NCBI RefSeq assembly: GCF_021028975.2 | Contig: NC_059434.1 | Span: 34,100,001 to 34,164,000, forward strand | Length of the DNA: 64,000 bases | Direction of reading: 5' to 3' | Origin: Sphaerodactylus townsendi | Taxonomy: Eukaryota | Shown: positions 16,043-41,974 of the stretch, piece by piece | Layout of the letters: the number at the start of each line of letters is the position of its first letter | Position numbering within the stretch: position 1 is the first letter of the stretch | The notes under the pieces: model-generated | Seen by the model: the letters and a program-made list of their open reading frames with translations, nothing else | Told to the model about the DNA's origin: nothing | Database searches by the model: none | Position numbers and translations under genes: made by a program

Positions 16043-16789
16043 TGTCCGGGGGTCGCCACAACGGCTCGCCCCGGATTCGTTCAGCCGGGGGGCGGGGCCT
16101 GCCAAGAGCCTGCAGGAGGCGTGGCGAAGGGACCACGATGCAGCTCAGCTGGAGCTTGTCAGGCCTTCTGCGGAGCACGGGGGCGAGGCAGGAGATGCCC
16201 CAGAAGCCCCAGCGAGGGCTTATAAGGCAGGGAGAGACGGGCGGGCGAGGCTTGGCACAGCAGGATGTGGGAGGACAGTGTGGAAGCTGGGAGGTGGAGA
16301 ACGGAGGACAGGGGGGAAGGAGGAAGGAGTGAAAGGGAGAAGTGTGAAAGGAGGAGGCAGTAGGGTCAAGGGGACCAGCACTGCGGAGAAGAGATAGAGA
16401 GGGGGGAGAGAGAAAGGAGAAACTAAGAAGGAGAAGAACGGAGTGGAGTGTGAAAGGCAAGGAGTTAGGAGGAAGGAAGGAGGAGAGAACGAGCAGGGAA
16501 GGCTCACAGGGGTGAAGGCCAGTAACCCGGTGGTGGGACATTTACTGGCGGGAGGGAGATTGGCTGAGACAACCCTAGTAGGCAGGGCGGCTGAGACCCC
16601 TGGCCTAGGGTAGGGAGTGCCTTCAGCAGCGGCAGAAAGGGAGGGTACTCCCTCCCGTCAGCATCCTGTGGCTGACTTCATTGAGAGCCCCAAAGACAGG
16701 GGCTGAAGTCAAGGAGACCAACACCTTGGAGAGGGATGGTGGGACGGCTTGTCAGCCCCACTCACAGGAGGGAAAGGGGGATCGCCACA
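16043..16789 (+). mobile_element. Solo LTR (Gypsy/ERV-type)
   Basis: Begins TGT, ends ACA; perfect 5-bp TSD GTAGT at 16038-16042 and 16790-16794; GC box GGGGCGGGGC, TATA-like CTTATAAGG ~16219, purine-rich downstream tract; CpGs retained. Confidence 0.85.
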
Positions 16790-24642: not shown

Positions 24643-24898
24643 AAGAACATAAGAAGGTAAGAAAGAGCCTGCTGGGTCAGACCAGAGTCCATCTAGTCCA
24701 GCACTCTGCTACTTGCAGTGGCTACCAGATGCCTTTGGGAGCTCACATGCAGGAGGTGAAAGCAATGGCCTTCTGCTGCTGCTGCAGCTCCCGAGCACCT
24801 GGTCTGCTAAGTCATTTGCAATCTCAGATCAAGGAGGATCAAGATTGGTAGCCATAATAGATTGACTTCTTTCCATAAATCTGTCCAAGCCCCTTTTA
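24643..24898 (-). mobile_element. CR1 LINE 3' end, copy 1
   Basis: AAGAACATAAG tail, GTCCATCTAGTCCAGC 3' motif, minus-strand ORF2 end KRGLDRFME. Confidence 0.85.
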
Positions 24899-24902
24899 GA
24901 AA

Positions 24903-25933
24903 GGGTCTCATTCGAGACAACGATGAAACCGCATACAGACGGGAGGTTGAACAACTAGCCTCGTGGTGCCACTGGAACAATCTAGAACTGAACACACTTA
25001 AAACCGTAGAAATGGTGGTAGATTTCAGGAGAAACCCTCCCATCCTACCTCCTCTCACAATACTAGACAACACAGTATCAACAGTAGAGACCTTTAAATT
25101 TCTAGGCTCCATCATATCTCATGACCTAAAATGGTCACCTAATATCAAAAATGTCATCAAAAAAGCACAACAAAGAATGTTCTTTCTGCGCCAACTCAGG
25201 AAGCTCAAACTGCCCAAGGAGCTGCTGATACAGTTCTACAGAGGAATCATTGAGTCTGTCATCTGCACCTCTATAACTGTGTGGTTTGGTTCTGCAACCC
25301 AACAAGATCGACACAGACTTCAGAGAATAATCACAACTGCAGAAAAAACAATTCCTTCTAACCTGCCTTCCATTGAGGGACCTGTATACTGCCGCGGGTC
25401 AAAAAAAGGGCTGTGAAAATATTACTGACCCCTCGCATCCTGGACATAAACTGTTTCAACTCTTACCCTCTAAACGTCGCTACAGAGCACTGCACACCAA
25501 GACAACTAGACATAAGAACAGTTTTTTCCCGAATGCCATCACTCTGTTAAACAAATAATTCCCTCGATAATGTTAAACTATTTATTATATACTTATTATA
25601 TAATTACTGCACTACTTTTTTCATCATTCCTATTACCCATCTCCTCCCACTTATGACTGTATGACTATAGCCTGTGCTGGCATTTCATTTTATTTTACAT
25701 TTTATTTTATTTTATTTTATGATTTTACATTTTATGTTTTCATTACTACTGATTGTTTCCTGATTGCTTACTAGACCTATATGACAATCATTAAGTGCTG
25801 TACCTTATGATTCTTGACAAATGTATTTTTCTTTTATGTACACTGAGAGCATATGCACCGGAGACAAATTCCTTGTGTGTCCAATCACACTTGGCCAATA
25901 AAGATTCTATTCTATTCTATTCTATTCTATTCT
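24903..25933 (+). mobile_element. Rex-Babar (Rex1-like) LINE, 5'-truncated, near-intact RT C-terminus
   Basis: GLIRDNDETAYRREVEQLASWC..NNLELNTLKTVEMVVDFRR...FKFLGS.IS.DLKW...KKAQQRMFFLRQLRK...FYRGIIESVICTSITVWFG...DPSHPGHKLFQLLPS.RRYR...KNSFFP.AITLLN; 3' UTR with AATAAA and (ATTCT)n tail. Confidence 0.92.
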
Positions 25934-34740: not shown

Positions 34741-37387
34741 AACTACAGGGACCTTGAAGACTACTTGGGTTCGAATCTGCCTCAATCAGTTACCTCATCT
34801 TGAAGTGTCATTTTTTCTTGCCTAGTTCACTTAACAGGATTGCTGTGAGGATAAAATTGACAGGTGGGAAGATAAACAGTGTACACTTCTTGAGTTCTTT
34901 GTATGAAGGGAAAATTAAACATGTATGGAATTGATTGTTTCAGGTCTGATGTTTGTCTCAGAATGAATTGTCTTGCTTGTAGAAGACAGCACCTTAGAAA
35001 GCACCTTCCTTGCTTAGAAAGCACAGGTTCAGGCTTTACTTCACAACATAAGTTTGGCAAGAAATCGACGGCAGTCGAAAGAATAATATAGTGTGCAGAT
35101 TTCTTGCTGCAGTATTACACTTTCCTATGCATATGATGTGGTGCAGTAGCAAGTGCATCTTGCAATCTGCTATATTAAGTGTTGCAGAATCAAAATTGAG
35201 TTGATTATGGTACAACGGTGCTTGAGGTTGCCTGACCAAATGGTTATGCTTGCATCTTGGAGAAATGTCTACAGGAGGCATTCTCTTCATGATATAGTGG
35301 GTTTCCTTGTTCTTGTGGTTTACTAGCATTTTAGATTACTGTGATTGAATCCAAGATGGCTTCTAAACGATCTACAGTAGAACCAAGCTGACAATCATTG
35401 CTGTTTGCCTCAGGGTAAAGGTCTGAGGGGTTTTTTTTTCTTGTGCAACTAAATAACACCTTGGGAGGCATCACCTGAAACAGATCATGTAAATGTAAAT
35501 GTGACAGAAGTTAGTTGTACCAGTTAAAATAGATTATAAGCTGCCGAATCTGCTTCAATGAAACTAGATTGCTGGTCAGTCAGATCAGACTTTGATGCTT
35601 TATGTTTAATATTCTTTACAGGTTATAAAACTTTGTGTATTGTAATGACTGCATACTTATACAAATAATAATGCATGAAATTGTAGGTCATACAGAAGGT
35701 GCTATTACAAGTTGGCCATTTACTGCTGACAGCAGTTAAGTTTATGGTGTAAGTTATTCTCCATTTCCACTATATGGAACTTCACAAATGTTATTAAAGA
35801 AAATACAGCAGCCTGGTAAACATCCATTTTTCAAAGATGTCCACTGAATGCATTAAAAGGACATGTGTTGTAATATCATAACAGCCTTTCAGATGACCAT
35901 ATTTTTCCCAAAATGGATTGTTGTACTGGCCACTACTACAATCCCATTATTTTATTTTACTTGTGCCCAGAAAACTTGGCCCAAATCCATGTCTAATGTT
36001 TTCTGAACAGACATTTGCTACATAATTATGTGTGGGCTTGTGGCAGATGCTTAAAACACATCATCCAAAAGTGTTGGCTTTGGATGCTGCTGAAGCATGG
36101 ATGAGTCACTTCCTCACCCAGAAAACATTCATGGCCCTTCTATCTGTACAGCATCCCTTTTGCCAGATGTCTCTATTTCTCTGCTATCATATTCCTTTCT
36201 CAGTTCTCAAAATGCCTTCTCACATCCAATAAACCCAGTCTTTCAGGTTTATAGCCTCTCTGCATTTTCAGAGAGATCCACAAATGGCAGATATTTGTTA
36301 ATGTGGTATCCAAGATTTGTTTAGAATTCCATCCAGATCCTGAAGACATTGAAAATTGTCTTCAACTGTTCTTGAGAACTCTAAAAGATCTCTGGGAAAG
36401 CCAGTGCTGCTCTTCTGTTTTATGTGCCAAGGGAATCCCTACTTGTATTTTTCCTATGCATACACAGAACAGGCCACATTAGCCTTGACAAGGGACAATG
36501 CCTGTTTGAACAGAGTAATATAACACTGGAGTCACCCCATGTGATGAAAGTATTTGAAGTGGGACAACAACAAGGATGCAATTAGAAATGTTTTCTGACT
36601 CAAGTCAAATATTCCCACTTTGAGAGTTTTTCTCCTCACCTTGTGAGAAATGTGTCTATACTATAAGTCTAGATTGTTGCACTGTTTTCAGTCTCCTTGT
36701 AACGAATTTCCCACTAAAATTAATGCGGTTTTTTACTCTTTATTTTAAATGCTTCTTTTCTCAGGTCAACAAAGCACAACTATTAGGGCCAGTTCTAGGT
36801 CTTGGAGAGTGCCAGGCAGACAACTTCTATGGCTCTTTTCCCCTCCTTTATTCATTAATAGGGTCTACCACTCTTGCCCTTCTTCCCTCCCATCCATCTT
36901 CATGCCACTCATTGGCCTCTGCATCCTTCCTCTGCGCATGAACCCTATCACTGTCCATGTTCACAGCTCTCTGTACTATCTCCAAAACCTTTGCTGGTGG
37001 CACAGTGCAATGCATGCAACTGAAATCACAAGTGATGGAGTGATAAAAAGTGAGCGAGGAGGGGATCAGCATCTGTTTGATTATTCAGTGTCCTTTTAGT
37101 CTTTACAAGGCCACTATTTTCAATGGGCTACTGATTTTGGCCCTTTAAATTTTAACAGCTGACATTGGTGTGTGGTCCTTCTTTCTCCCTCCCTCCCTGC
37201 TTCAGCAGTTCCCTTAAACTAAAATTCTCAGAGATAAATTATCATAATTTCTAGAAACTGAGAGTATTTGGGGTCATTTTAGATATTCCAAAAAAGACCT
37301 GAAACAGCTAATTTGGGGTTTAATTTCAACTCAGATAAATCTGAATCCCTCAGATGTATTCAAAACCTTTTTCTGTTTCTACTTTAA

Positions 37388-40022
37388 TCTATATATATAT
37401 AAAGCAAACCGTGAGTTTGTTCCTGATGGTCTACCACAGGAACTGCTGGCCCAACTCCTCTGAAAATTCCCAGCCACTATAGCCTACCAGGTGAGCGTGT
37501 TTTAAGCCTCTCAGCTGACTCCGGCACCCCTCCTGAGCCACGAAAACCTCTCCTTAACAAAACCTGTGGCACCCCCTACTGGCTGGTCCGCCAGCGAATA
37601 CTCCGCCCACTACCCTGCCGACCCACCAATATCTCCTGCTGCCTATCCCAACGTGCCAGAAGAAGCCTCGCTGCCGGGTTCCAACTGCTGCCACGTCCAC
37701 TGTGCCTGGCCCGCAGACCACCCCCCGAGCGATCTCCCCCTCCTCCCAACACCATCTACTGCACATGCCCGCAACTGTCCTCAGATCATCACTGCCACTC
37801 CTAGCAGCCGCGCTGCCAACACCCCTTCTGCAGCTGCGCAAATGCGACCACACTTCGTCAGACACCACCCGGAACACAATGAGTGGCAGCAGCACTCTCC
37901 CCTGCCCCCCACTTACTTTTGCTCGCCAAACAGAATGCATAGCGATCACTGCACCGCCTGCCCTGCACAGCTTTCACACGCCCAGCCACCTACCCGCCTC
38001 ATTTGCGCCCCAGCAACTCCCACAGTGGACTTCGCTCTGCCCACTGAGCTCAACATTTTTCCCTACAAGGCACATACGGGGCTCCCTCACCCCACCAAAC
38101 CATCTCCCTTTGCAACACATACACACGTTTGCACGTGAGATGTCAAGTGTGGTTCCCCTCCTCACATGTAGATAACTTTCACGCTCTGTGCCTCACCCAC
38201 TACTACCACACAACACACTTACTCTCATACATATCCAGCTCATCCTCACACACCTCACTCTGCCCTCCCTCACATTCAACCACCACTTAACCACTTCTGC
38301 ACCCATATTCGCCACAGTTCTCTGCCTTCATTTGCTCATCTCTAACACCCACCCACTCTTCCAAGACACATACACCTCCTACTCACATCCTTCCCTACTA
38401 CCTACCTCACATTCCAACAACACATTCACACACCATCAAGCACACCCTGACTTTTTCATTCCTCCAATAACACGGCCAATTCACTCATTGTGCCACACAA
38501 ACAACTCTCCAACGACACCACCTCCTGCCTTCATCATTCCCTTCCACAAACCACACCACTACAACTTCCTTCTTCCACTAACATCACACTCTTTTCTGCT
38601 GTTGCCTACCCAACCAGCTTGGCTTCTGAGATTTCATTGCCATGGTTTTCAATAAAGACCAGAAACAGTTTAAAATGAAAGGGTTTTAAATTGAAAGCTG
38701 TGGTTTTCAGGAAACTAAAGGTGCACCAGCACTTTTCATTAGCTTCTTATATTTATAACTACAGTGTCTTCAATTTAGGATTTATAGTTTTTTCCTTGCT
38801 CAAAGGCAACCTTTCACAGACCAACTGGCCAAATTGCAAGCCAACTCCCGCATCTTTATTGCAAAATACCAACACGCCAATTTCACCTGAACACTGCGCT
38901 TTCTCTTTATACAAGCCGGCTGCCTCTCAAGTGTGCCTTTCTCTGGGGTACACTGGCTGAAGCACCTGTGCAAAAGTTACACTGCATGACTCACAAAACT
39001 ATTCGCCTTCGCTCTGACACAACCCCACTTACCAACATCCACGCTTACTCCCAGTCACAGGACTCTGCCCAGGCGAGCCTGGGTGTGTGTGTGGGTAGGA
39101 GTCTGGTGTCTGCCAACCCCGCCCCTCCAAAACACTTCCTCTGTGTGGACGTGCTCACATTGAACTCTCCAAAAGCCACCTCTAACAACTGTTCCATAGG
39201 TTCCCCACCACTGCTCTAAGGCACTGATGGCGAACTTCTTCGAGACCGAGTGCCCACATTCCAACCCAACACCCACTGATTTATTGCAAATTCCCATCAC
39301 AGCAATTTATCCTGAATACTGAGGTTACAGTTCAGAAAACCAGGTTGGCTCCGAGGCACGCATTACTCAAGAGTAAGCTTGGTAAACCAACTGTGACATA
39401 CTTTGAATGGCTGAGTCGTACCCTTAGGAGGGTTTACTCAGAAGCAACATCCATTGCCAGCAACCACTGCCTCAACAGGGTGGACCACCACAGACCTTGA
39501 AAACATTCCATGCTGGCCAATGAATCTAAGCCCTTCCTATCTAACCTCAGGAAGAACAACTCATGCTTCCAAATGACGTGCAATCTACCCTGGGACGATA
39601 TACAACAGCTTTTACTTTATCCTTCACCTATATCCTTCATACACAAGTAGATCAGCAGAGGATGGCTGTAAATCCACTACCGTGCAATTGCAAAACAGTT
39701 TCATCAAATTAGACAACCAGTGAGTTGTTCCATATTCACTTTGCTATCAACCCCATACAAGGCACACATCAACGTACAATACTGCAACTCTCTTAAACCA
39801 ATCCAACACCTTTGTAAGTACATGAATAAAGCCAGCAGCATATCAGTTTTTGTCATACACCCATACAGAAGTGTGAGGAATGCAGTCACACACATCAATG
39901 ACATAGCACAGTATCAGGCTGCACGTTTCCATGAGCACGTACTACTGGCCTCTGTAATTGCTACTGTTCCTTTCCCATTTCACCACAATAAGCCACAGCA
40001 ACGCGTGGCCAGGTACTGCTAG
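37388..40022 (+). mobile_element. Non-autonomous Helitron with RepHel remnants
   Basis: 5' A|TCTATATATATATAAAG; 3' hairpin GCCACAGCAACGCGTGGC then CTAG|T; no TSD. Remnants: PPQTLKT..ESKPFLSNLRKNNSCFQMT (39485-39578) and YPSYTSRSAEDG..DNQ*VVPYS.LLSTPYKAHINVQYCNSLKPIQHLCKYMNK..NDIAQYQAARF (39625-39930), matching Helitron Rep motifs. Confidence 0.92.
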
Positions 40023-40269
40023 TTATTAATAAATGTGGAGAATATGAAGAGCATGTATCTCTGCATGTATCACTCACTCTGCATGCAATGATTGCTCCTT
40101 TGACTGGATTTGTCTAGCCCCTCCTATGATAAACATAAAAGCATTGATTCAAAAGATATACAGTCCAAGGCATCTTATGAAATGAGTTGTAACTCTTGAA
40201 AGATCATGCTGAATATTTTTTGTTAAAAAACGCCACTGAACTCTTGTTTTATTTGGATGCTAGATAGGC

Positions 40270-40954
40270 AGCCCAATCCAGGTGACTCTACCAATGTTCT
40301 GCCACGTCTACTTCAGAGGGCTTCCAGGTGGCATGAGGCCACCTGAAAGCTCTCCACAGGCTAAATGAAGTTGTGCCACCCTTTGGGGTGGTAAATGTCT
40401 TAGACCTGTGCTGGCATTCCCAGCTCAAAGGCCTGGTGGAAGAGGTTTAAAGTCAGTTCCAAGGTGGGGGAAGCTTTCTCCAGCATTAGCCAGGAGGCCT
40501 GGATGGGCAGGGGCCACCAGAGGCCCCCGCAGGGGGCTGGCTGGCCACTGAGTAGGTTGCACACCTCTGAGCCGGCGGCGTGGCCTTTGGAGGAGGTCCG
40601 CCCATGACCAGCTGCTCCGGGGCTCAGAACACCTCCTCTGGGGTGATGGGATTCAGCCAGTTCTGCAAACTAAGCAAAAAATCAGCTACTGGTTCTATGA
40701 AACCGGTGTAAACTGGCTGAATCCCACCACTGGCTCCACCCCAGGAATGCCCCTAGTCCACCCCCAGCTGTGCTGGAAGCTAAGTTTAATCTGGCACGGT
40801 TTGATTGGGTGGACTCCCACAGTGCCTGGCTGCCAGTTTGCTCTTCCCTCCCCCTGTGTAAGTACCTCTTAAACCATTGGGGTGGGAAAATGAATTGAAA
40901 CAGCCCTGCATTAGCTTCAAGAGCCAATTTGCCCCTTCCCAAAAGGATTGGGCT
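40270..40954. mobile_element. MITE with CAGCCCAATCC termini, containing a nested short hAT-like MITE (~40642-40731)
   Basis: CAGCCCAATCC ... GGATTGGGCTG; inner GGTGATGGGATTCAGCCAGTT ... AACTGGCTGAATCCCACCACTG. Confidence 0.6.
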
Positions 40955-41974
40955 GTAATAAATCTATCAGTACATGGAACTGTTTCTTTCATCGTGTCTA
41001 TATTGCTTTATTTTCTACATTTGTTGTCTGCCTTTCCTATGAAGATTCAAGGTGGGTTACACAATTATGAAATAATGCAATAAATGCAATAAAGACCAAC
41101 ATGCAATAAACCAAATGAAACAATGCAATAAAACTGGATTAATCAATGGAATCAACTGTAATGACAGACTTAGAATTTTCCTTTTACATTTTGTAACATT
41201 CTAGCTTTCTCATGTTATTCAAATGAGTAGGCAAGGATCCAAAGAACTGCATGATTATTCTGTGTGCCAAGGACAGGCTATGTACTTGTGTTTCCTAAAC
41301 AGCAACTCCTCTCACTGCATGGCAAACTACTTCTGGCAAAAGCATCCTGAAGTGTTGTATGAAGGCCTGCTGTTCCAAGAAAATAAGTCAAACAATCCCA
41401 CTGTGGTGTGCAGAAATATTTTGGTTCACCTTAGATGTTTGGCTCACTGTGCTAGTACTTCTGTATTGTCTAGACAATTAACTTCTGAAAGAACCTCTAT
41501 CAAAATGTTGAATTCCATAATATCCATTCAACAAAATGCACCCTGTTTCAGCCCTTATCATAGTAAACAATTTGTTAGTAATCTTTTTTCCCTTTTCACG
41601 CAGGACAAATTCAAGTATATGCACATGAAAGAAATTACCAAGGTGTTAGACACTGCATAATTATCCTCTTACAAGAGATTTCTGAGAATGCATCCCTTGT
41701 ATTTTCTTTAAAAGAACTATGTAGTGGAGCTCTTAACTGAATTAGGCCATATGTGGGTGATGCTTTATAGCAGCATAATTTCAAAATACACCTAGCAGGC
41801 ATTGTAATATGTAAGATGTTTCTGGCAAGAATCGTCCTTTAAAAGTAGATTGTACACATTGCAGTGATAAATATTGAGATCTCAAAGGCACAAAAGGATT
41901 TTCAATAGTGGCTTCTAGTTTCATTCCTGTGCTTTAAGTTTTTTTCATTTTTTATCACAAAACTTTCCCATAAA

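What the first reader, a model, noticed from the sequence alone, without database searches (positions are those of the whole stretch)
37388..40022. Helitron showing strand-specific guanine loss (G>C/T/A on the transferred + strand)
Seen: the element has intact Helitron ends, and 38190-38600 is almost devoid of G on +. Compared with the Helitron Rep consensus as I recall it (PPEPL, DGYPLYRRRS.EDGG, DN.WVVPY, HINVEYCNSVKSIKYICKYVNKGSDMAVFG, DEI.QYQ.GRY), many of the amino-acid changes are explained by losing a G: E>Q (twice, CAG/CAA), D>H (CAC), G>L (CTA), R>T (ACA), G>C (TGT), W>stop (TGA), V>L (CTT), V>M (ATG), G>A (GCC, GCA), M>I (ATA), A>S (TCA), G>V (GTC), E>D (GAC). G>C transversions are the most frequent, unlike neutral vertebrate decay (symmetric, CpG transitions). 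Inference: a mutational process tied to the rolling-circle ssDNA intermediate, either guanine damage on the peeled + strand or cytidine deamination plus abasic bypass (APOBEC/UNG/REV1-like) on the - strand, accumulated over rounds of transposition. This may be a host anti-Helitron editing signature. Caveat: the ancestral codons are inferred from a remembered protein consensus.
Basis: partly seen in the sequence, partly recalled or inferred. Interest (0 to 1): 0.8.

Follow-up and report, generated by a model that had tools for sequence, protein, structure and literature searches.

The report
Helitron remnant with one-strand purine loss
A broken, non-autonomous rolling-circle transposon (Helitron) in an animal genome has lost guanines (and adenines) and gained cytosines on one strand only, a real and statistically solid pattern that five related Helitron lineages do not show and whose cause is still open.

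Summary
Window 37388-40022 is a deleted, non-autonomous Helitron: A|TC...CTAG|T, with both termini homologous to relatives. Its + strand is C 34%, G 15.5%. At 38190-38600 G is 4.4%, the lowest in the 64 kb, and the skew starts and stops at the element ends.

I fetched real DNA of six relatives, so nothing rests on a remembered consensus. In Rep remnant 39620-39935 the window lineage lost 28 of 62 ancestral G but 2 of 47 C (Fisher 8e-7). All 33 transversions are purine>pyrimidine. There are 27 gains of C against 6 of G. Ancestral CpG became CpA nine times and TpG never. The same test on five relatives is symmetric.

- G>A (14) and A>C (12) outnumber G>C (7), and adenines are hit too.
- A third or more of G losses sit at CpG, and the GA (APOBEC-type) context is not enriched.
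- The asymmetry is patchy: absent at 39519-39618 and at 38600-38800.
- The G desert has no detectable ancestor, so it cannot be polarised.
- Symmetric relatives mean it is not a general by-product of Helitron transposition.

Most likely it is a lineage- or host-specific, strand-biased mutational process that acted before this insertion. The mechanism is unproven.

The parts
37387..37387 (+). Target-site A 5' of the insertion; T at 40023 on the other side (A|T target)
   Evidence: Read directly. Single-copy contigs of the runs end or start at the element borders (pieces 9, 15, 17, 23).
37388..37403 (+). Helitron 5' terminus TCTATATATATATAAA
   Evidence: 16/16 identical to L005 7798-7813, about 200 nt upstream of the Rep start codon of the pseudoscorpion relative.
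37404..38189 (+). GC-rich (about 60%), C-skewed (skew -0.26 to -0.47) internal region of unknown origin, present in a few paralogous copies
   Evidence: Composition. Paralogous contigs at about 88% identity and depth about 5x that of the flanks. No Pfam family. No homology to relatives even with an asymmetry-aware matrix.
38190..38600 (+). G desert: G 4.4%, C 43%, A 27%, T 25%
   Evidence: Residual G sits mostly in TG and GC contexts. No tandem array. Its ORF has no protein relatives. At 38299, 92 or more distinct contigs in one run show that part of it belongs to an abundant, equally G-poor repeat.
38601..38810 (+). AT-rich segment without GC skew in the middle of the element
   Evidence: C = G = 17.4%.
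38818..38896 (+). First copy of an internal 79-nt repeat (second copy at 39243-39321, 76% identical); both resemble very abundant genomic repeats
   Evidence: self-BLAST. (very high summed depth at 39072-39572; loose ends at 39290, 39343, 39425, 39465).
39243..39321 (+). Second copy of the internal 79-nt repeat
39485..39585 (+). Rep remnant A: PPQTL ... FLSNLRKNNSCFQMT (P0014 residues about 105-138), frame-shifted
   Evidence: tblastn, 70% over 20 aa. (alignment with L006 and L005). No G-loss asymmetry here: with remnant B, G lost 0/7 and C lost 4/19.
39576..39617 (+). Rep remnant B (P0014 residues 441-454), joined to remnant A by a deletion of about 300 codons
39631..39995 (+). Rep remnant C (P0014 residues about 540-660), including the two-tyrosine catalytic motif region, with stops and frameshifts. 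The polarised strand-asymmetric spectrum was measured here.
39991..40022 (+). Helitron 3' terminus: hairpin 39992-40009, then CAGGTACTGCTAG
   Evidence: fold. (84% identical to the L001 3' end GGCCACGCAGAGCGTGGCCAGGTCCAGCTAG followed by T).

Best explanation
The feature is an internally deleted, non-autonomous copy of a Helitron family that also occurs in a pseudoscorpion chromosome, in a second NCBI assembly and in ENA metagenome-assembly contigs. It keeps the canonical 5' and 3' termini and three decayed pieces of the Rep gene. It also carries about 2 kb of C-rich sequence of unknown origin.

Shown: in the one long segment where ancestry can be polarised (39620-39935), the lineage leading to this copy changed in a strongly strand-asymmetric way. 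Purines of the + strand were lost (G 45%, A 23%). Pyrimidines were kept (C 4%, T 12%). Changes ran mostly towards C. CpG decayed to CpA, not TpG.

Inferred: this reflects a strand-biased mutational process that acted on the mobile, non-coding lineage before this insertion. It is specific to this lineage or host and is not intrinsic to Helitron transposition. The spectrum fits best a + strand that was repeatedly re-synthesised on a damaged or uracil-bearing - strand template. In that scheme, C or 5mC deamination gives G>A, and abasic-site bypass that inserts dC gives N>C and leaves C unchanged. This is consistent with donor re-synthesis and re-use in the Helraiser model.

Whether the G desert is the end state of the same process or a captured C-rich sequence is not settled.
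For: - Anatomy.
- Skew confined to the element.
- Polarised spectrum: G lost 28/62 against C lost 2/47 (p = 8e-7), and 19/39 against 1/27 when an outgroup is required.
- 33 R>Y against 0 Y>R transversions (p = 6e-8); CpG fates CA 9, TG 0.
- Outside CpG: G lost 16/49 against C lost 0/34 (p = 1e-4). Changes to C 27 against to G 6 (p = 2.5e-4).
- Same test on relatives L001, L003, L004, L005, L006 over up to 1.3 kb is symmetric.
- Rep DNA of relatives has no skew. Third codon positions of the near-intact relative are C .19, G .16.
- Derived residues are unique to the window among 123 relatives.
- Paralogous contigs at 80% identity or more, and 64 or more contigs sharing the derived 3' region, argue for a pre-insertion origin. 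Differences between orthologous copies in related organisms are few and ordinary.
- Iterating the estimated substitution matrix 3-4 times gives C .40-.44, G .06-.07, near the G desert.
- The plus strand is the one transferred, and the donor is re-synthesised and re-used (PMC5876387).
Against: - Only about 290 sites and 63 changes from one copy. No full set of genomic copies could be fetched.
- Rep remnants A and B show no asymmetry (G lost 0/7, C lost 4/19).
- Region 38600-38800 has no skew.
- Short glimpses of the abundant repeat fragments show ordinary C>T changes (loose ends).
- A process acting on the whole + strand should be uniform unless the element is a mosaic of pieces of different age.
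- The many changes at A (A>C 12, A>T 7) need extra assumptions in any deaminase model.
- The G desert has more A and less T than the iterated matrix predicts.
- No context signature reaches significance apart from CpG.
Confidence: 0.5

Rival explanations
1. Host anti-Helitron editing. An AID/APOBEC-type deaminase acts on the single-stranded - strand. UNG excision and REV1-type bypass follow, and the changes accumulate over rounds of transposition.
For: - G>A is the largest class, and G>C and G>T are both present.
- C on the + strand is almost untouched.
- dC insertion opposite abasic sites would explain N>C (27 changes) and silent C.
- Three of the six relatives come from invertebrate genome assemblies (a pseudoscorpion, and GCA_900618345.1), and all five lineages tested are symmetric, as expected if the factor is host-specific.
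Against: - G followed by A (TC on the - strand) is not enriched among lost G: 11/19 against 15/39, p = 0.26.
- 12 of 28 G losses are at CpG, where spontaneous 5mC deamination suffices.
- 25 changes at A are not deaminase products.
- The pattern is patchy along the element.
- No paper in the held library links APOBEC editing to Helitrons.
Confidence: 0.15
2. Mosaic origin plus a local process. Most of the skew (37400-38600) is simply the composition of captured or low-complexity C-rich DNA. The asymmetry of the Rep remnant comes from a local, in-place process such as antisense transcription with R-loop exposure of the G-rich - strand.
For: - The 2 kb upstream of the Rep remnant has no homology to relatives, whose 5' untranslated region is only about 200 nt.
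- Segments differ sharply in skew.
- Parts of the element match abundant unrelated repeats.
- Other strongly skewed low-complexity tracts exist in the window (16200-16600).
Against: - It would be a coincidence for captured C-rich DNA and an independently C-shifted Rep remnant to lie on the same strand of one element.
- The flanks show no skew.
- Paralogous copies at 80% identity or more share the derived state.
- Known transcription-linked asymmetries are far weaker than 33:0.
Confidence: 0.2
3. Selection on the non-autonomous family for a G-poor transferred strand. Such a strand forms almost no internal secondary structure or G-quadruplexes, leaving the 3' hairpin as the only signal.
For: - Predicted ssDNA folding energy is -0.078 kcal/nt for the element and -0.012 for the G desert. 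It is -0.12 for a skew-removed control of equal GC and -0.11 to -0.12 for the flanks.
- The 3' hairpin acts as the terminator in Helraiser (PMC4778049).
Against: - The folding result follows from composition alone.
- Selection on single point changes in a small transposon population would be very weak.
- It does not explain why C is almost never lost once G is gone, nor the loss of A.
Confidence: 0.08
4. Artefact of ancestral inference: a long branch, or relatives sharing a compositional shift.
For: Only six relatives at 65-74% nucleotide identity. Ancestral states were assigned by parsimony.
Against: - The result holds when an outgroup must agree.
- All five relatives treated the same way are symmetric.
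- The ancestral residues are conserved in over 100 proteins.
Confidence: 0.05

Closest known systems
Non-autonomous animal Helitrons (for example the HelibatN families) and the Helraiser model of transposition
   Same: 5'-TC and CTAG-3' ends, a short hairpin about 10 nt before the 3' end, insertion between A and T, decayed Rep remnants, and a heterogeneous interior shared by only some copies (PMC4778049).
   Different: Strong one-strand G depletion and C enrichment, and a purine-only transversion spectrum. I found no paper describing this for Helitrons. Relatives of the same family lack it.
APOBEC3-type G>A hypermutation of retroviruses and retroelements
   Same: Strand-coordinated loss of G on the plus strand, attributed to deamination of a single-stranded minus strand.
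   Different: Here G>A is only 14 of 63 changes. G>C, G>T, A>C and A>T are common. The GA context is not enriched and CpG dominates. The element is a DNA transposon with no reverse-transcription step.
Strand compositional asymmetry of vertebrate mitochondrial DNA (G-poor, C- and A-rich light-strand sequence)
   Same: Similar end composition (G far below C, A at or above T). The transition part of the spectrum (G>A and T>C in excess of C>T and A>G) is what deamination of the opposite, single-stranded strand produces. This comparison rests on general knowledge; it was not tested here.
   Different: Half of the changes here are transversions, all R>Y, which the mitochondrial model does not predict. 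The sequence is nuclear and Helitron-derived.

Membership tests
Helitron (eukaryotic rolling-circle transposon) | 5'-TC ... CTRR-3' termini, no terminal inverted repeats | tested here: met
   TC at 37388-37389 and CTAG at 40019-40022. No terminal inverted repeat spanning the ends.
Helitron (eukaryotic rolling-circle transposon) | Short hairpin about 10-12 nt upstream of the 3' end | tested here: met
   GCCAC(A)GC / GCGTGGC at 39992-40009, at -5.8 kcal/mol and not better than shuffles (z = -0.56). It is conserved with the 8-bp stem of the L001 relative.
Helitron (eukaryotic rolling-circle transposon) | Insertion between A and T without target-site duplication | tested here: met
   A37387 | element | T40023. 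No empty site was available for comparison, because all three coded organisms carry the insertion.
Helitron (eukaryotic rolling-circle transposon) | Rep (HUH, two-tyrosine) and Pif1-like helicase protein, or remnants of it | tested here: met
   Remnants of Rep residues about 105-138, 441-454 and 540-660. Pfam itself gave no hit on the short pieces, whereas the relative P0014 carries Helitron_like_N. No helicase remnant is present, so the copy is non-autonomous.
Helitron (eukaryotic rolling-circle transposon) | Termini homologous to those of an autonomous relative | tested here: met
   5' 16 nt identical to L005 7798-7813. 3' 31 nt 84% identical to L001 1694-1723.
APOBEC/AID-type edited element | Strand-coordinated excess of G>A (C>T on the other strand) | tested here: met
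   G>A 14 against C>T 2.
APOBEC/AID-type edited element | Preferred dinucleotide context of the deaminase (for example GA on the plus strand for TC-specific enzymes) | tested here: not met
   G lost in GA context 11/19 against 15/39 elsewhere, p = 0.26. CpG is the only significant context (12/13, p = 7e-5). The sample is small.
APOBEC/AID-type edited element | Changes restricted to G:C pairs | tested here: not met
   25 of 63 changes are at A and 8 at T.

The most novel reading that the evidence does not exclude
A vertebrate-type host, or this Helitron lineage's own replication route, imposes strand-coordinated hypermutation on a rolling-circle DNA transposon. The mutations would arise through its single-stranded or re-synthesised intermediate (uracil or abasic lesions on the - strand, dC-inserting bypass). 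The process drives whole non-autonomous families towards a G-free transferred strand. This would be the first editing-type footprint on a DNA transposon and a natural record of which strand is exposed during Helitron transposition.
Probability: 0.25. Interest if true: 0.8.

Novelty: new variant of a known kind. Interest (0 to 1): 0.55.

Why it matters
Helitrons are the only eukaryotic DNA transposons thought to move through a single strand. Direct traces of that intermediate in natural genomes are lacking. A strand-specific substitution footprint that is absent from related lineages in other hosts would give two things. One is a handle on which strand is exposed or re-synthesised in vivo. The other is a test of whether hosts attack it with deaminase or glycosylase pathways known so far from retroelements and viruses. 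If the pattern instead proves to be a mosaic of captured C-rich DNA plus one odd segment, the element is an ordinary dead Helitron.

Tried and rejected
1. A neo-3'-terminus inside the Rep ORF. The last 10 nt align with the relatives' coding GTACATCTAG. Rejected: the whole 3' end is homologous to the canonical terminus of the L001 relative.
2. P0001/L002, a 1164-aa tandem-repeat protein that was the top hit. It has no nucleotide similarity to the element, so it is a repeat-inflated chance hit.
3. Other copies in the window: none.
4. Tandem-repeat origin of the G desert: no array found. Only one 58-nt pair at 71% identity.
5. Protein relatives of the G-desert ORF and close relatives of the Rep piece in the word-index search: none.
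6. Scan of JGI metagenome contigs for the 3' end: three chance matches of 19-20 nt.
7. Asymmetry-aware local alignment of 37400-39520 against the relatives' Helitron DNA: no score above shuffles, while the positive control was strong.
8. Rfam: no RNA family in the window.
9. Copy number from read laying. The summed depths of 1e5-1e6 come largely from short matches to abundant repeats and low-complexity contigs (loose ends at 37482, 37503, 38323, 39425, 39465). I do not read them as family size.
10. Pfam on the three short Rep pieces gave nothing.
11. A 3' end for the L005 autonomous relative could not be fixed.

No N run was touched.
Full report
**What is there**

Window 37388-40022 (+ strand) begins TC after an A and ends CTAG before a T. 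A small hairpin (39992-40009) ends 10 nt before the terminal CTAG.
- The first 16 nt (TCTATATATATATAAA) are identical to L005 7798-7813. That site lies about 200 nt upstream of the Rep start codon of a near-intact Helitron on a chromosome of the pseudoscorpion Cordylochernes scorpioides. The species name comes from bioRxiv 10.1101/2024.07.29.605683.
- The last 31 nt are 84% identical to the 3' terminus of a decayed copy in L001, which reads GGCCACGCAGAGCGTGGCCAGGTCCAGCTAG followed by T.

The interior holds three frame-shifted pieces of the Rep gene:
- 39485-39585: PPQTL ... FLSNLRKNNSCFQMT.
- 39576-39617.
- 39631-39995, which includes the two-tyrosine motif region.

There is no helicase remnant. 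The 2.1 kb between the 5' end and the first Rep piece has no detectable relative. There is no Pfam hit, no protein relative and no nucleotide homology to the relatives, even with a scoring matrix built from the observed asymmetric spectrum. The copy is therefore a deleted, non-autonomous Helitron.

**The composition claim**

- The element is C 33.8% and G 15.5%. Region 38190-38600 has 18 G in 411 nt and 43% C.
- This is the most G-poor 400-nt stretch of the window on either strand. Its skew is -0.82, against a maximum of 0.55 elsewhere.
- The skew switches on and off at the element borders.
- It is not uniform. 37400-38100 is GC-rich with skew about -0.4. 38100-38600 is the G desert. 38600-38800 has no skew at all. 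38800-40000 runs between -0.06 and -0.4.

**Is the G loss derived?**

I replaced this with real sequences.
- An exhaustive profile-free search with the 77-aa Rep piece returned 123 relatives.
- All carry HINVEYCNSVKSIKYICKYVNKGSDMAVF-type residues, and none shares the window's derived residues.
- I fetched the encoding DNA of six relatives: L001 and L004 from GCA_900618345.1, L003, L006 and L007 from ENA assemblies, and L005.
- Their Rep DNA is A .33, C .20, G .19, T .28, with no GC skew. Third codon positions of the near-intact relative are C .19, G .16.

I aligned window 39620-39935 with the six relatives. Ancestral bases were assigned by agreement of at least three of the four closer relatives. 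The window lineage then shows 63 changes at 287 sites:

| Class | Count | Class | Count |
|---|---|---|---|
| G>A | 14 | A>T | 7 |
| A>C | 12 | A>G | 6 |
| T>C | 8 | C>T | 2 |
| G>C | 7 | All Y>R transversions | 0 |
| G>T | 7 | | |

Key contrasts:
- G lost 28/62 against C lost 2/47 (Fisher 8e-7). When an outgroup must also agree: 19/39 against 1/27 (8e-5).
- All 33 transversions are purine to pyrimidine (binomial 6e-8).
- Changes to C number 27, changes to G number 6 (p = 2.5e-4).
- Of 13 ancestral CpG, 9 became CpA, none became TpG, 2 became TC, 1 became CT and 1 survived.
- Outside CpG the asymmetry remains: G lost 16/49, C lost 0/34 (p = 1e-4).

Neither is met in this segment.

**Controls**

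Treating each relative as the target in the same alignment gives balanced spectra. Over a longer Rep alignment (up to about 1.3 kb), the lineages of L006, L001, L005, L004 and L003 all show G loss about equal to C loss, R>Y about equal to Y>R, and balanced CpG fates. The method is therefore not biased. The asymmetry is a property of the window's lineage, not of Helitron evolution in general.

**Before or after insertion?**

Logan contigs of four runs from three coded, closely related organisms were laid on 36400-41400.
- Organism B matches the window exactly.
- Organisms A and C carry the same insertion, with 1-2% difference both inside the element and in the flanks. The listed differences are ordinary transitions and a few A/C changes.
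- Paralogous contigs at 80-90% identity cover 37726-38120 and parts of the Rep remnant (for example two further contigs at 39874).
- Sixty-four or more contigs share the derived 3' region, differing by an 8-nt indel near 39959.
- The inferred ancestor is itself only about 78% identical to the window. Copies laid at 80% or more must therefore share much of the derived state.
- In the run-wide table of differences, other copies do not carry G where the window carries C (C>G 14 against G>C 16 in run X2).

I conclude, as an inference, that the G-poor state predates this insertion. The very high summed depths in some bins come largely from short matches to abundant repeats, so I do not use them as copy numbers.

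**Limits and patchiness**

- Rep remnants A and B (76 sites polarised with two relatives each) show 10 changes with no G loss (0/7) and four C losses out of 19. These segments were already G-poor in the ancestor.
- Pooling all Rep segments still gives G lost 29/70 against C lost 7/71 (1.6e-5). The signal nevertheless sits in 39620-39935.
- 38600-38800 is unskewed.
- The two fragments of an abundant repeat (38818-38896 and 39243-39321) differ from the 30-nt glimpses of that repeat given by the loose ends mainly by C>T.
- The element is therefore a mosaic whose pieces have different histories, or the process was local.

**The G desert**

It cannot be polarised. Iterating the estimated substitution matrix 3-4 times from the relatives' composition gives C .40-.44, G .06-.07, A .19-.22, T .31. 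The G desert itself is C .43, G .04, A .27, T .25. The match is similar but not exact, so a common process is possible and not shown.

**Mechanism**

Shown: strand-asymmetric purine loss and C gain in one segment, confined to this lineage.

What the data rule in and out:
- Damage to an exposed + strand by deamination predicts C>T on +, which is almost absent. Simple exposure of the transferred strand therefore does not fit.
- Depurination of the + strand would explain why only purines change, and G more than A. It needs dG insertion opposite abasic sites to give the commonest transversions (R>C), which is not the usual bypass choice (general knowledge, not tested).
- The alternative fits more classes. 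If the + strand is repeatedly re-synthesised on a - strand carrying deaminated C or 5mC and abasic sites, then G>A (especially at CpG) and N>C by dC-inserting bypass follow, and C stays C.
- Helraiser work shows that the plus strand is the one transferred and that the donor is re-synthesised and re-used (PMC5876387). The 3' hairpin acts as terminator (PMC4778049).
However, the APOBEC-type GA context is not enriched (p = 0.26), and the 25 changes at A need a further assumption.
- Selection for an unstructured strand agrees with the folding energies. That result follows from composition alone, and such selection would be weak on single changes.

I rank these readings as follows:

| Reading | Probability |
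|---|---|
| Lineage- or host-specific strand-biased mutational process before insertion | about 0.5 |
| Specific deaminase-editing version | 0.15 |
| Mosaic or captured composition plus a local in-place process | 0.2 |
| Selection for a G-poor transferred strand | 0.08 |
| Inference artefact | 0.05 |

**Comparison with the known and novelty**

As an element this is an ordinary new member of the Helitrons. All defining features that could be tested are met.

The strand-coordinated spectrum has no counterpart for Helitrons in the papers I could search. It resembles APOBEC hypermutation only in its G>A component. It resembles mitochondrial strand asymmetry only in its transitions.

Earlier notes of the scan on this genome mention another Helitron (s1-736316) and a Harbinger in this window (s1-736261). 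Neither concerns this signature.

**Verdict**

Interest is moderate to high but rests on one copy. The decisive work is a genome-wide, branch-resolved spectrum of the family.

Noticed in passing
L005 7798-11337 (GCA_030710605.1 CP092886.1), L001 and L004 (GCA_900618345.1), L003, L006, L007 (ENA assemblies): Relatives of this Helitron family, 65-74% identical in Rep DNA and with conserved termini, occur in a pseudoscorpion chromosome, in small contigs of a second NCBI assembly and in contigs filed as metagenome assemblies. This patchy cross-phylum spread fits horizontal transfer.
   Followed up: partly
window 16200-16600 (- strand): A 400-nt polypyrimidine (C+T rich) tract with GC skew +0.74 and AT skew +0.71 on the + strand, next to a GC-rich segment. 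It is a different kind of skew from the Helitron's, being A-poor as well.
   Followed up: partly
window 24862-25416 (+): An ORF with an ALKBH8_N domain (E = 3e-16). I take it for the C-terminal part of a CR1-like LINE ORF2 remnant; that assignment is from memory.
   Followed up: no
window 39425-39465 and 39239-39572: Short stretches inside the element match extremely abundant genomic repeats. Hundreds of contigs diverge on both sides, with loose ends such as GAGCTTACTCCCAGGTAAAGGATCG. This suggests a SINE-like fragment inside the Helitron.
   Followed up: partly
L004 about 565-690: The decayed relative in L004 carries a tandem duplication of a roughly 27-nt unit (GAAATCGCCCAGTATTAGACTGAAAGG...) inside its Rep remnant.
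   Followed up: no
L002 1416-4910 (ENA ERZ21849172 contig_25394): A predicted 1164-aa protein made of 16 near-identical 68-aa repeats was the top hit of the Rep search through repeat-inflated scoring. It has no nucleotide similarity to the element.
   Followed up: yes
window 37203-37385: Single-copy contigs of three runs skip 181 nt just left of the insertion site and carry TCTGCC instead. This may be an indel allele or a paralogous locus beside the Helitron. The shorter side is only 22 nt.
   Followed up: no
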